From: Selaginella moellendorffii
Lineage: Eukaryota; Plantae; Lycopodiophyta
Length of the DNA stretch: 64,000 nt
NCBI RefSeq assembly: GCF_000143415.4
Contig: NW_003314285.1
Span: 1,329,370 to 1,393,369 of the forward strand
Direction: 5' to 3'
In this document: positions 13,548 to 14,946 of the stretch, in pieces
How positions within the stretch are numbered: the stretch's first letter is position 1
Layout of the letters: each line of letters starts with the position of its first letter
The notes under the pieces: model-generated
The model's input: the letters and a program-made list of their open reading frames with translations, nothing else
Databases searched by the model: none
What the model was told of the DNA's origin: nothing
Program-made: the position numbers and the translations under genes

Positions 13548-14946
13548 ATGGCTTCCGGTGACACGGGCGCGATCGAGGCGGGTCCCGTGGCGGCGCCCCC
13601 TCCCACAGCGGCGTCCACGACTAAGAGGAAGCGGCGCCTTGCGGATCTAACAGCTGAGGAGGTTTGTAATCGCCAAAGCAACCAAGCACAAAAAAAAAGA
13701 GGAGTTTCTTTTGCGAGGTTTTCTTGTCTCGATCCAATTTTGATCCATTTCGATCTAACGCTAGCGTGTAGAGGGTCTAAACATTGATGCATTTGCTCTC
13801 TTTTTGCAGAGTTTTTGAGAGCTCCTCGGTCTTGAGAGGGAGGTTTTGTGAATGCGGCTTCTTTTAAGTGGTCTCTTCCATTGCAGATAAACGAGATTGT
13901 GGCACTGAGAGGGAAAATGCCTCAGACTGTTGTGGGGAAGCGATTTGGCATTGAGCAAACGGAGGTTAGTGCCATCCAGCGCTTGCAAAGAGCCAAGACT
14001 GCTCGGCTTCTCGAGGACCAAGAGAAGAAGGTAAAGTTCGATAAGCTCTATCAATCGATCTAACTTCCGGTTTTCCTCCATAGAATCCTATCAAGAGAGT
14101 GAAGAATGTGGAATTATCAGTTCCAATAGCGTATGGTACCATATCTTTCTGGCTGGGGAAGAAAGCAGACGAGTAAGAATTCACGTTTCTTTTTTTTTCT
14201 TTTTAAACTTTTTTGTGCTTGTTCTTTTCTAGCTTGCATTCTCATAAATGGACCGTGTACATCCGTAGTGCCACCAATGAAGACTTAGGACCAATTATCA
14301 GCAAAGTGGTGTTTCAGCTACACCCGAGCTTTAACAATCCAACTCGAGTTGTGGAATCAGCTCCATTTGAGCTAAGCGAATCGGGATGGGGGGAGTTTGA
14401 GATCAGCATGACTGTGTTTTTCCAAAAAGATGCGGCTGAGAAGACGCTCGAGCTGTAAGTTCCTTCCACCAGATTTAACATTCGTCTCAAAAGCAACCTC
14501 TTCCACCAGGTTTCACCACTTGAAGTTGTACCACGAAGATGACAATGCTCCACAGAGCACGAAAAAGCCTGTGGTTGTGGAGTCGTATGACGAGCTGGTG
14601 TTCCAAGAGCCGACGGAAGCGTTCTACTCGAGGGTGAAAAACCTCCCGGCAGTTCATGTGAATGGCTCGCCAGGCGAGCTCAATGTCTCGTCGGGTAAGG
14701 CAGTGATGGTTTCGTAGTTCTTATCTATTCTCTATGTTTTTCTTTCTAGGTGCTCTAGAAATCTCAAACGAGAGGAAACGAGGAGACACCAAAGATCATC
14801 AGCTCGGCCAATGGTTTGGCAAGTACTCGGAAACGGATGAGTTAACGTCGATCATGGGGGCTCGACAACAGGTACAAAAAGAGATCGCGAAGTTGAAAAG
14901 TATGCTTGATTCTGAAGCAATGAAACTCAAGCCGAGCGCTCCTTAG
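13548..14946 (+). CDS. YAF9: YEATS-domain protein YAF9/GAS41 (NuA4/SWR1 subunit), multi-exon
   Basis: [90 protein letters not shown], and a C-terminal coiled coil. Start is either 13548 (spliced 13661/13887) or 13917. Confidence 0.92.

What the first reader, a model, noticed from the sequence alone, without database searches (positions are those of the whole stretch)
13548..14030. YAF9 with a spliced N-terminal helix-turn-helix domain
Seen: joining the donor after 13661 (GAG|GTTTGT) to the acceptor at 13887 (TTGCAG|ATA) keeps frame and gives [45 protein letters not shown] ahead of the YEATS domain. Established: the pattern basic arm, LTxEE..I, then xxxRFGIxxxxVSxI is that of CENP-B/pipsqueak-type HTH domains, and the yeast, animal and Arabidopsis YAF9/GAS41 proteins I know have no such domain. 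Inference: a histone-acyl reader of NuA4/SWR1 fused to a DNA-binding module, possibly transposase-derived, that could target H2A.Z deposition by sequence.
Basis: partly seen in the sequence, partly recalled or inferred. Interest (0 to 1): 0.72.

Follow-up and report, generated by a model that had tools for sequence, protein, structure and literature searches.

The report
YAF9 chromatin reader with ancestral HTH
The Selaginella YAF9/GAS41 histone-acyl reader gene really has two extra 5' exons coding a small three-helix helix-turn-helix module, which is conserved from zygnematophyte algae to lycophytes, has decayed to a relic in seed plants, and appears in none of the papers I could search.

Summary
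Observation confirmed. Transcript contigs from three studies join 13661 to 13887 (GT..AG, in frame). The six-exon gene (13548-14946, 316 codons) is the Selaginella moellendorffii YAF9/TAF14b orthologue. Its database model SELMODRAFT_174113 starts at an internal Met (13917) and lacks the first 48 residues.

- **Fold.** KRKRR-L.DLT.EE|[29 protein letters not shown] is a three-helix HTH. AlphaFold2 on a close orthologue gives pLDDT 86-91, and all structural neighbours are HTH domains. hhalign against HTH_23/Sigma70_r4-type repeats gives 98.6%.
- **Family.** No curated family reaches threshold. The best is PF12824 MRP-L20 (22.8 bits against a cut-off of 30.4). CENP-B/psq membership and a transposase origin are not supported.
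- **Age.** The module sits on YAF9 of Closterium, Marchantia, mosses and two lycophytes, with the intron in the same place. It is the best-conserved part of the protein (81% identity; YEATS 74%). Seed-plant N-termini align to its second half as a degenerate relic.
- **Splicing.** An about equally abundant alternative acceptor (13810) puts a stop right after exon 1.

DNA binding is inferred, not shown. I found no paper describing this. I class it as a new variant of a known kind.

The parts
13548..13661 (+). Exon 1: start codon, 25-residue Ala/Pro/Thr-rich tail, basic arm KRKRR (13623-13637), then L-A-D-L-T-A-E-E, which is the lead-in and start of HTH helix 1
   Evidence: Translation. In-frame TAG at 13536-38. 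Transcript contigs cover 13531-13661. The KRKRRL.DLT.EE motif is conserved in orthologues.
13662..13886 (+). Intron 1 (225 nt, GT..AG, phase 0), which splits the HTH inside helix 1. It holds an alternative acceptor AG at 13808-09, so that exon 2 starts at 13810.
   Evidence: Joints 13661|13887 and 13661|13810 occur in X1, X5 and X10. Intron-retaining contigs occur in X1, X5 and X6. The same intron place is seen in Sphagnum (P0031 reads through it), in Closterium model P0008 and in L001.
13810..13886 (+). A 77-nt alternative 5' extension of exon 2. It shifts the frame and reads S-F-stop straight after exon 1.
13887..14030 (+). Exon 2: the rest of helix 1 ([10 protein letters not shown]), helix 2 (QTVVGKRF), the turn (GIE), the long helix 3 ([19 protein letters not shown]) and an acidic/basic linker (EDQEKK)
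   Evidence: Translation. phmmer finds YAF9 orthologues at 75-90% identity. Helix positions are taken by homology to the AF2 model of P0026:72-144.
13917..13919 (+). Internal ATG (the Met of GKMPQT). It is the start of the database model SELMODRAFT_174113 (P0121, 268 aa) and corresponds to the first Met of Physcomitrium isoform X2 and of seed-plant TAF14b.
14084..14172 (+). Exon 3: linker and first YEATS strand ([29 protein letters not shown])
   Evidence: Exact substring of P0121; joints.
14233..14454 (+). Exon 4: YEATS core, including the LHPSF and SGWGEF motifs
   Evidence: Pfam PF03366 YEATS, E 5.9e-28; exact substring of P0121.
14510..14694 (+). Exon 5: end of the YEATS fold and a linker
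14750..14946 (+). Exon 6: C-terminal helix (coiled-coil region of YAF9/GAS41) and the stop codon. Transcript contigs (3' UTR) run on to about 15023-15137.
   Evidence: The helix is residues 300-346 in the full-length AF2 model of the orthologue.

Best explanation
This is the Selaginella moellendorffii orthologue of YAF9/GAS41/TAF14b, the YEATS-domain acyl-lysine reader shared by the NuA4 and SWR1 complexes. SHOWN: its full transcript has two 5' coding exons that the database model lacks. Together they encode a disordered tail, a KRKRR basic arm and a roughly 45-residue three-helix helix-turn-helix module. In the orthologue model a flexible linker joins the module to the YEATS domain. SHOWN: the module is an ancestral streptophyte feature of this one gene family. 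It occurs in a zygnematophyte alga, a liverwort, mosses and lycophytes, with the intron in the same place. It is more conserved than the YEATS domain. In seed plants only a degenerate, probably unfolded remnant of its second half survives, starting at the equivalent of the internal Met. SHOWN: about half of the exon 1-exon 2 joint contigs use an acceptor 77 nt upstream, which stops the frame after exon 1. That transcript can yield at most the short protein, from Met 13917, which lacks the arm and helix 1 and so cannot form the HTH. INFERRED: the intact module most likely binds nucleic acid, most probably DNA. Helix 3 ([12 protein letters not shown], almost wholly invariant) would lie in the major groove and the basic arm on the backbone or minor groove, as in resolvase, sigma region 4 and homeodomain-type HTHs. 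This would give the long isoform a second anchor on chromatin beside acyl-lysine reading, while splice choice sets the ratio of anchored to plain YAF9. My probabilities: gene model, fold and evolutionary history about 0.85-0.9; DNA binding about 0.5.
For: - **Splice and exons:**
- **Gene identity:** YEATS hit at E 5.9e-28. Exons 3-6 are exact substrings of SELMODRAFT_174113.
- **Orthologues with the module:** exhaustive phmmer with exon 2 against 1.84 billion representatives gave 13 YAF9-type hits (E 8e-18 to 2e-6), and no hit was another eukaryotic gene family carrying the module. Source names are Physcomitrium, Ceratodon, Sphagnum, Marchantia, Diphasiastrum and Closterium.
- **Conservation:** 17 invariant columns among 16 sequences. 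Mean pairwise identity is 81% for the module, 74% for YEATS and 53% for the C-terminus.
- **HTH by sequence:** four of the six non-YAF9 hits are tandem-HTH proteins (E 1e-6 to 9e-4), which Pfam calls HTH_23, Sigma70_r4, HTH_38 and CENP-B_N. hhalign of the module against those repeat units gives 98.6% probability over 41 columns. These include the LT.EEI stretch coded by exon 1, which was not in the query.
- **HTH by structure:** AF2 gives pLDDT 86-91 over residues 11-50, with helices 17-27, 32-39 and 43-63. Nearly all top Foldseek rows are HTH or winged-helix DNA- or RNA-binding domains, with the best at probability 0.99. VIA-align gives tight fits to Tn3 resolvase (1.1 A over 42 residues), sigma region 4 (1.5/45) and DesR (1.6/48). 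The ESM Atlas shape neighbours are HTH_Tnp_1 (TM 0.76), HTH_7, HTH_23/28 and PAX. The language-model neighbours of exon 2 are mostly HTH-named clusters, at scores of 0.85-0.87, which is lead level only.
- **Independent domain:** the full-length orthologue model has a linker at pLDDT below 50 between the HTH and YEATS.
- **Relic in seed plants:**
- **Short isoform elsewhere:** Physcomitrium isoform X2 starts at the same Met.
Against: - No curated HTH family reaches its threshold. Exon 2 alone gives no Pfam, NCBIfam or PDB sequence hit. The module profile finds only an Xre-type HTH in the PDB, at E 0.46.
- No Foldseek match has E <= 0.001, and VIA Z values of 5-6 are in the range the tool warns may reflect only a common helical arrangement.
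- The sequences in A2 were chosen from hits of the query, so the hhalign figure is not fully independent.
- The fold was predicted on close orthologues (92% identical over exon 2), not on the window's own joined protein.
- An HTH fold does not prove DNA binding. SANT/Myb-like relatives bind histones, sigma region 4 also binds proteins, and the best family and Foldseek neighbour (MRP-L20, 8a22_Yc) sit on ribosomal RNA.
- KRKRR may simply be a nuclear localisation signal.
- Contigs cannot give isoform ratios, starts or protein output. The run type (RNA) is a guess by the index.
Confidence: 0.6

Rival explanations
1. The module has an HTH fold but works as a protein- or nucleosome-binding adaptor (SANT/Myb-like, or like sigma region 4 bound to partners). 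It would dock YAF9 to a NuA4/SWR1 subunit or to histones rather than read DNA sequence. KRKRR would serve as the nuclear localisation signal.
For: The highest VIA Z values go to Myb/SANT-type domains: Cdc5 at 6.0, SNAPc Myb at 5.8 and CoREST SANT at 5.2. The near-invariance of the whole helix surface over the very long divergence between Closterium and lycophytes fits a fixed protein partner at least as well as a DNA site. Seed plants manage without the module, as expected if a partner changed.
Against: The Myb/SANT fits are loose (rmsd 3.5-4.3 A). The resolvase, sigma4 and LuxR-type DNA-binding HTHs fit at 1.1-1.7 A. All sequence relatives are DNA-binding-type HTH repeats. A basic arm directly before helix 1 is typical of DNA-binding HTHs (established knowledge of homeodomain, Hin and Tc3).
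Confidence: 0.28
2. The module binds RNA, as its nearest profile and fold neighbour does. That neighbour is the HTH-like part of mitoribosomal proteins of the MRP-L20 family. It would link YAF9 to nascent or non-coding RNA.
For: PF12824 MRP-L20 is the best Pfam family for 10 of 16 members (best E 1.2e-4). The top Foldseek row is mitoribosomal chain 8a22_Yc (probability 0.99, 27% identity), and yeast and Neurospora mitoribosomal chains are also listed. VIA gives 8a22_Yc 1.8 A over 51 residues at 26% identity.
Against: The score (22.8 bits) is below the curated cut-off of 30.4. Bacterial or phage HTH repeat proteins hit the same part of that profile, so that part is a generic HTH. YAF9 complexes act on chromatin (PMC7047200).
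Confidence: 0.08
3. The extension is splicing or annotation noise. The real protein would be the 268-residue database model starting at Met 13917, and exons 1-2 would be mostly 5' UTR.
For: The database model starts at 13917. The 13810 acceptor and intron retention are common among the contigs. Seed-plant proteins start at the equivalent Met.
Against: The 13661|13887 joint occurs in three studies. The exon 1 coding tail and the first ten codons of exon 2 are conserved at protein level across Zygnematophyceae, bryophytes and lycophytes, with 81% module identity, higher than the YEATS domain. A UTR would not keep an open frame and an invariant helix 1.
Confidence: 0.04

Closest known systems
YAF9 / GAS41 (YEATS4) / plant TAF14b-YAF9A/B, shared subunit of NuA4/TIP60 and SWR1/SRCAP
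   Same: It has a YEATS domain (PF03366, E 5.9e-28) with the LHPSF and SGWGEF motifs and a C-terminal helix. It is 60-70% identical to angiosperm TAF14b over that part. Arabidopsis YAF9A/B are nuclear and bind H3, H3K9ac and H3K27ac (PMC7047200).
   Different: It carries an intact N-terminal basic arm plus a three-helix HTH. The 79 seed-plant and other proteins in alignment A3 have only a degenerate remnant or nothing in that place. From my own knowledge, the yeast and human proteins have none.
Simple three-helix HTH domains of the resolvase (HTH_7), HTH_23/28/38 and sigma-70 region 4 kind
   Same: The sequence pattern is the same: L-T-x-E-E-I-x-E-I-x-A-L, then x-Q-x-x-(I/V)-(G/A)-x-x-(F/Y)-G-(I/V)-x-Q-(S/T)-x-V-S-x-I. 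hhalign gives 98.6% to such repeat units. Fits are 1.1-1.7 A over 42-48 residues, and Atlas TM values are 0.6-0.76.
   Different: No member of the module reaches any of these families' curated thresholds; the best is Sigma70_r4 at E 0.013. The module is eukaryotic, split by an intron, fused to a YEATS reader, and has a much longer third helix.
PF12824 MRP-L20 (mitochondrial ribosomal protein) HTH-like region
   Same: It is the best Pfam match (10 of 16 members, profile positions about 72-141) and the best Foldseek match (8a22_Yc, 27% identity).
   Different: It is sub-threshold (22.8 against 30.4 bits). It sits in a different protein context (a ribosomal protein that lies on rRNA). Generic HTH repeats hit the same profile region.
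   Same: The general layout is shared: a basic arm, then three helices, with a similar spacing of hydrophobic residues.
   Different: There is no PF04218 or psq-family hit on any member at E <= 10. The structures of that type (2elh, 2cob) rank 28th and 13th in Foldseek, at probabilities 0.30 and 0.41. No transposase relative was found.

Membership tests
YAF9/GAS41 (YEATS4) family | YEATS domain matching PF03366 above the curated threshold | tested here: met
   Exon 4 alone scores 97.1 bits against a cut-off of 22, E 5.9e-28.
YAF9/GAS41 (YEATS4) family | Orthology to plant TAF14b/YAF9 over the YEATS domain and the C-terminal helix | tested here: met
   Exons 3-6 are exact substrings of SELMODRAFT_174113. 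That protein clusters with 625 plant YEATS/TAF14b proteins at E <= 1e-20. A C-terminal helix is predicted in the orthologue.
YAF9/GAS41 (YEATS4) family | Acyl-lysine binding and membership of the NuA4/SWR1 complexes | not testable with these tools
   The LHPSF and SGWGEF motifs are present in exon 4. Binding and complex membership need biochemistry.
Helix-turn-helix (three-helix) DNA-binding fold | Three helices in HTH geometry | tested here: met
   The AF2 model of the orthologue module has pLDDT 86-91 and helices 17-27, 32-39 and 43-63. Neighbours in PDB and Atlas are almost all HTH domains. This was predicted on orthologues, not on the window's joined protein.
Helix-turn-helix (three-helix) DNA-binding fold | Significant sequence or profile relation to known HTH domains | tested here: inconclusive
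   Positive: phmmer E 9.7e-7 to a tandem HTH_23/Sigma70_r4 protein, and hhalign 98.6% to such repeats. Negative: every Pfam HTH family is below its cut-off, and the PDB profile search gives only E 0.46.
Helix-turn-helix (three-helix) DNA-binding fold | Binds DNA | not testable with these tools
   Needs EMSA, DAP-seq or a structure with DNA.
CENP-B N / pipsqueak HTH (often transposase-derived) | Match to PF04218 (CENP-B_N) or the psq family | tested here: not met
   No hit on full-length orthologues or on any of 16 module sequences at E <= 10.
CENP-B N / pipsqueak HTH (often transposase-derived) | Relatives among pogo/Tigger-type transposases | tested here: not met
   The exhaustive phmmer search returned only YAF9 orthologues, bacterial or phage-like HTH repeat proteins and one low-complexity hit.
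PF12824 MRP-L20 | Score above the gathering threshold (30.4 bits) | tested here: not met
   The best score is 22.8 bits, E 1.2e-4; 10 of 16 members give sub-threshold hits.

The most novel reading that the evidence does not exclude
In non-seed streptophytes the long YAF9 isoform is a sequence-reading subunit. Its invariant HTH would recognise a fixed DNA motif and so place NuA4 acetylation and SWR1 H2A.Z deposition at defined sites. Alternative splicing of the intron that cuts helix 1 would switch between the DNA-anchored form and the plain reader. Seed plants would have lost this direct targeting when the module decayed, and handed it to separate transcription factors.
Probability: 0.25. Interest if true: 0.8.

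Novelty: new variant of a known kind. Interest (0 to 1): 0.62.

Why it matters
How NuA4 and SWR1 are brought to particular genes is an open question. In plants it is studied almost only in Arabidopsis, whose YAF9 has lost this module. A conserved nucleic-acid-binding-type domain sitting on the shared reader subunit in algae, bryophytes and lycophytes would be a built-in targeting device. It can be tested directly in Marchantia or Physcomitrium by deleting the module, mapping YAF9, H2A.Z and H4ac, and running DAP-seq.

The result also explains the conserved but unstructured 'MP..KK.G..Q....QR.K...ED.EKK' N-terminus of seed-plant TAF14b as a relic. It corrects the Selaginella gene model, which lacks 48 N-terminal residues. 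It defines a domain that Pfam does not yet cover.

Tried and rejected
- **Exon-by-exon scans gave nothing.** Pfam on exons 1, 2 and 3, NCBIfam on exon 2, and phmmer of exon 2 against PDB all returned no hits. A single exon holds only part of the HTH.
- **PDB and Foldseek were weak.** The module alignment against PDB found only 2o38_A (Xre-type HTH) at E 0.46. Foldseek against PDB gave no match at E <= 0.001.
- **Word-index searches are incomplete.** Two searches with the module region found the same 14 or so proteins and no fern, hornwort or seed-plant protein with an intact module. Both also missed the Selaginella model P0121, which holds 38 residues of the module. Their blanks are therefore weak evidence of absence.
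- **Literature.** Searches for YAF9 or YEATS with helix-turn-helix, Selaginella, Marchantia, Physcomitrium or bryophyte found no description of this domain. The library is open-access only.
- **Rejected readings.** CENP-B/psq membership has no profile hit. A recent transposase capture is contradicted by the module and intron being shared with Closterium. The '5' UTR or noise' reading is contradicted by conservation exceeding that of YEATS.
- **Unknown organism.** I could not name the organism of locus L001 (Logan SRR9302961).
- **Left out by rule.** Any search, fold or look-up with the window's own joined exons was left out. All full-length work used natural orthologues by id.
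Full report
**1. What is in the sequence**

On the + strand an ATG at 13548 follows an in-frame TAG at 13536-38. It opens 38 codons: [38 protein letters not shown]. These end at a GAG|GTTTGT donor after 13661. After TTGCAG, 13887-14030 reads 48 codons: [48 protein letters not shown]. These end at AAG|GTAAAG. Four more exons complete a 951-nt reading frame of 316 codons plus stop: 14084-14172, 14233-14454, 14510-14694 and 14750-14946. Every intron is GT..AG. Exon 4 alone matches Pfam YEATS at E 5.9e-28.

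**2. Is the splice real?**

Yes. Contigs of four public runs were laid on 13200-15300.
- Runs X1, X5 and X10 (one organism, three studies) each hold a contig joining 13661 to 13887.
- One long contig per run joins all the downstream exons.
- The same three runs also hold a joint from 13661 to 13810, at similar contig depth (23/100/17 against 20/156/10). This acceptor adds 77 nt, and the frame then reads Ser-Phe-stop.
- X1 and X5 also have contigs colinear with part of intron 1.
- The contig of X6 (a second, coded organism) retains intron 1, with a 9-nt deletion at 13673.

The index only guesses that these runs are RNA, but spliced forms are what they hold. Contigs cannot give true ratios, starts or ends.

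**3. Whose gene is it?**

The translations of exons 3-6 are exact substrings of P0121, named by NCBI as SELMODRAFT_174113 of Selaginella moellendorffii. That 268-residue model begins [14 protein letters not shown]..., at the ATG at 13917 inside exon 2. The database protein therefore lacks exon 1 and the first ten codons of exon 2. The 316-residue form was not returned by any protein search here.

**4. Relatives**

Exon 2 (48 aa) was run by phmmer against 1.84 billion representatives and gave 19 hits.

The best 13 (E 8e-18 to 2e-6) are YAF9-type proteins or exon-sized fragments of them:
- Sphagnum (P0003, P0026, P0027, P0031);
- Physcomitrium patens 'TFIID subunit 14b isoform X1' (P0007);
- Ceratodon (P0020);
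- Marchantia (P0025);
- the lycophyte Diphasiastrum (P0028);
- the zygnematophyte alga Closterium sp. NIES-64 (P0008);
- unnamed transcript or metagenome proteins.

In all full-length ones the order is the same: disordered tail, KRKRRL.DL(T/S)..[16 protein letters not shown].(F/Y)[15 protein letters not shown], a short linker, then the YEATS domain.

Two contigs fetched by exact look-up show the same exon layout.
- L001 has exon 1 ending ...KKKRRIADLSAAE, then exon 2 beginning IDEILALKGK..., then YEATS exons.
- L002 has the module exon followed by an exon encoding ...[20 protein letters not shown].

The intron sits at the same codon boundary in Selaginella, Sphagnum (P0031 reads through it), Closterium (model P0008 starts with intron-derived residues and then INEIV) and L001. 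The fusion and its intron therefore predate the split of Zygnematophyceae and land plants.

**5. Conservation**

In an alignment of 16 module sequences, 17 columns are invariant. Among six full-length orthologues, mean pairwise identity by region is:

| Region | Mean pairwise identity |
|---|---|
| HTH module | 81% |
| YEATS domain | 74% |
| C-terminal helix | 53% |
| N-terminal tail | 42% |

The module is the most constrained part of the protein.

**6. Is it a helix-turn-helix?**

*Sequence evidence*
- Four of the six non-YAF9 hits (E 1e-6 to 9e-4) are proteins built of tandem HTH units. Pfam assigns these to HTH_23, Sigma70_r4, HTH_38, HTH_28, HTH_7 and CENP-B_N at E down to 1e-40.
- A profile-profile comparison of the module alignment with 12 such units gives 98.6% probability over 41 columns.
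- That aligned stretch includes L-T-x-E-E-I, which exon 1 encodes and which was not part of the query. It therefore also supports the exon 1-exon 2 join as one domain. The units were picked from the query's own hits, so the figure is not fully independent.
- Curated families stay below threshold. MRP-L20 (PF12824) is the best, matching 10 of 16 members with a best E of 1.2e-4 (22.8 bits against a cut-off of 30.4). HTH_37 (0.0014) and Sigma70_r4 (0.013) follow. There is no CENP-B_N or psq hit.

*Structure evidence*
- AlphaFold2 on the module alignment used Sphagnum P0026:72-144 as first row, which is 92% identical to the window over exon 2. It gives pLDDT 86-91 for residues 11-50 and helices at 17-27, 32-39 and 43-63.
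- Foldseek against PDB has no match at E <= 0.001. Nearly all top rows are HTH or winged-helix domains: mitoribosomal chain 8a22_Yc (probability 0.99, 27% identity), CRX, OTX2 and DUX4 homeodomains, NarL, sigma region 4 and DeoR.
- VIA-align against 48,161 chains gives Z of only 5-6, a range the tool warns can be a common arrangement. The fits are tight, however: Tn3 resolvase 1.1 A over 42 residues, sigma region 4 1.5/45, DesR 1.6/48 and 8a22_Yc 1.8/51.
- ESM Atlas neighbours by shape are HTH_Tnp_1 (TM 0.76), resolvase HTH_7, HTH_23/28 and PAX.
- The language-model neighbours of exon 2 alone are mostly HTH-named clusters, at lead-level scores of 0.85-0.87.

*Domain layout.* In a full-length model of the Diphasiastrum orthologue:

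| Residues | Feature | Confidence |
|---|---|---|
| 1-52 | disordered tail | mostly pLDDT below 50 (11-52) |
| 58-98 | HTH region (helices 63-71, 78-85, 89-98) | pLDDT 74-81 |
| 100-111 | linker | pLDDT below 50 |
| 120-270 | YEATS domain | pLDDT about 90 |
| 300-346 | long C-terminal helix | pLDDT 66-87 |

My reading is that the three-helix HTH fold is well supported. Assignment to a particular HTH family is not.

**7. What happened in seed plants**

An 88-sequence alignment shows that gymnosperm and angiosperm TAF14b proteins start at the Met that corresponds to 13917. They continue as MP(H/Q)T..(A/G)(K/R)K.GG(D/E)Q.(D/E)G......(K/R).QR.K..R..ED.EKK. This aligns with [32 protein letters not shown], but the hydrophobic core residues (V, V, F, I, V, I) are replaced by Gly, Ser or Asp. 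Exon 1, the arm and helix 1 are gone, and the rest has decayed.
- Some unnamed proteins (P0052, P0053) keep MPQAVVGKK but have lost helix 3.
- Annotated fern models (Adiantum, Ceratopteris) start just before the YEATS domain, which may reflect annotation.
- Diphasiastrum has a second paralogue with a broken module (P0051).
- A Sphagnum compactum model skips exon 2 in frame (P0090).

**8. Isoforms**

Physcomitrium isoform X2 (P0030) begins at the same internal Met. In the window, the 13810 acceptor leaves that Met as the first start that can give a YEATS protein. It lies behind a 40-codon upstream frame and an out-of-frame ATG at 13851 (read), so that transcript may instead be an unproductive form. 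Either way, splice choice in the intron that cuts helix 1 decides whether an intact HTH can be made. This step is inferred from the sequence; protein output was not measured.

**9. Mechanism**

*Shown:* a YAF9 orthologue with an independently folding, strongly conserved HTH-type module on a flexible linker.

*Inferred:* the module binds nucleic acid, most likely DNA.
- It has a net charge of about +6.
- It has a basic arm directly before helix 1.
- It has a Gly-containing turn.
- It has an invariant polar and basic helix 3 (Q, T, S, Q, R, Q, R, K).

This would give NuA4/SWR1 a second chromatin anchor in addition to acyl-lysine reading. Background: YAF9 is shared by SWR1 and NuA4, and Arabidopsis YAF9A/B bind H3, H3K9ac and H3K27ac (PMC7047200).

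*Rivals:* a protein- or nucleosome-binding adaptor (Myb/SANT neighbours), RNA binding (MRP-L20 neighbours), or noise, which conservation excludes.

**10. Novelty**

The proteins are in public databases, but their precomputed Pfam lists show only YEATS families. Four literature searches found no description of the domain. I class it as a new variant of a known kind: a known reader with an undescribed, ancestral HTH module.

**11. Limits**

- The window's own joined protein was not searched or folded, by rule.
- Structure evidence rests on predictions for close orthologues.
- Absence in ferns, hornworts and deeper algae rests on incomplete searches.

Noticed in passing
window 15501-15550 and 16007-16056: A 50-nt inverted repeat, 86% complementary with 456 nt between the arms, lies about 550 nt downstream of the YAF9 stop codon. 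It may be a small terminal-inverted-repeat element or a hairpin locus.
   Followed up: partly
window 13662-14028 (run X6, coded organism B): The only contig of the second organism retains intron 1. It differs by a 9-nt deletion at 13673, beside the run of A at 13691-13699, and by G>A at 13699. It may be a close relative or the other haplotype.
   Followed up: no
window 13282-13449: A 55-codon ATG ORF lies just upstream of the YAF9 start (MMEMEENRKTISQELANHL...). No contig depth was seen anywhere in 13200-13483 in the four runs.
   Followed up: no
L001:1-2400 (Logan SRR9302961 contig, 38% GC, organism unknown): This is the most divergent complete module found: KKKRRIADLSAAE | [35 protein letters not shown], with the same intron place, followed by YEATS exons. 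Three ORFs with DUF7810 hits lie downstream. Naming the organism would help date the module.
   Followed up: partly
P0090 (Sphagnum compactum), P0051 (Diphasiastrum paralogue): One Sphagnum model joins exon 1 directly to exon 3. This skips the 144-nt exon 2 in frame and removes the HTH but keeps the arm. Diphasiastrum has a second YAF9 gene whose model has only MPQAVVGKKYGIKQME of the module.
   Followed up: no
P0016, P0018 (metagenome/Logan proteins): These proteins are built of 4-8 tandem copies of a unit K-L-T-x-x-(E/Q)-(I/V)-Q-E-I-R-A-L-x-G-K-x-T-Q-x-E-I-x-x-x-(F/Y)-G-(I/V)-S-x-S-x-(I/V)-x-x-I. They are the module's closest non-plant sequence relatives. Their biology is unknown.
   Followed up: partly
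window 53537-61700: An earlier first-stage note on this window flags a divergent RME-8/DNAJC13 paralogue without a J-domain. I did not examine it.
   Followed up: no
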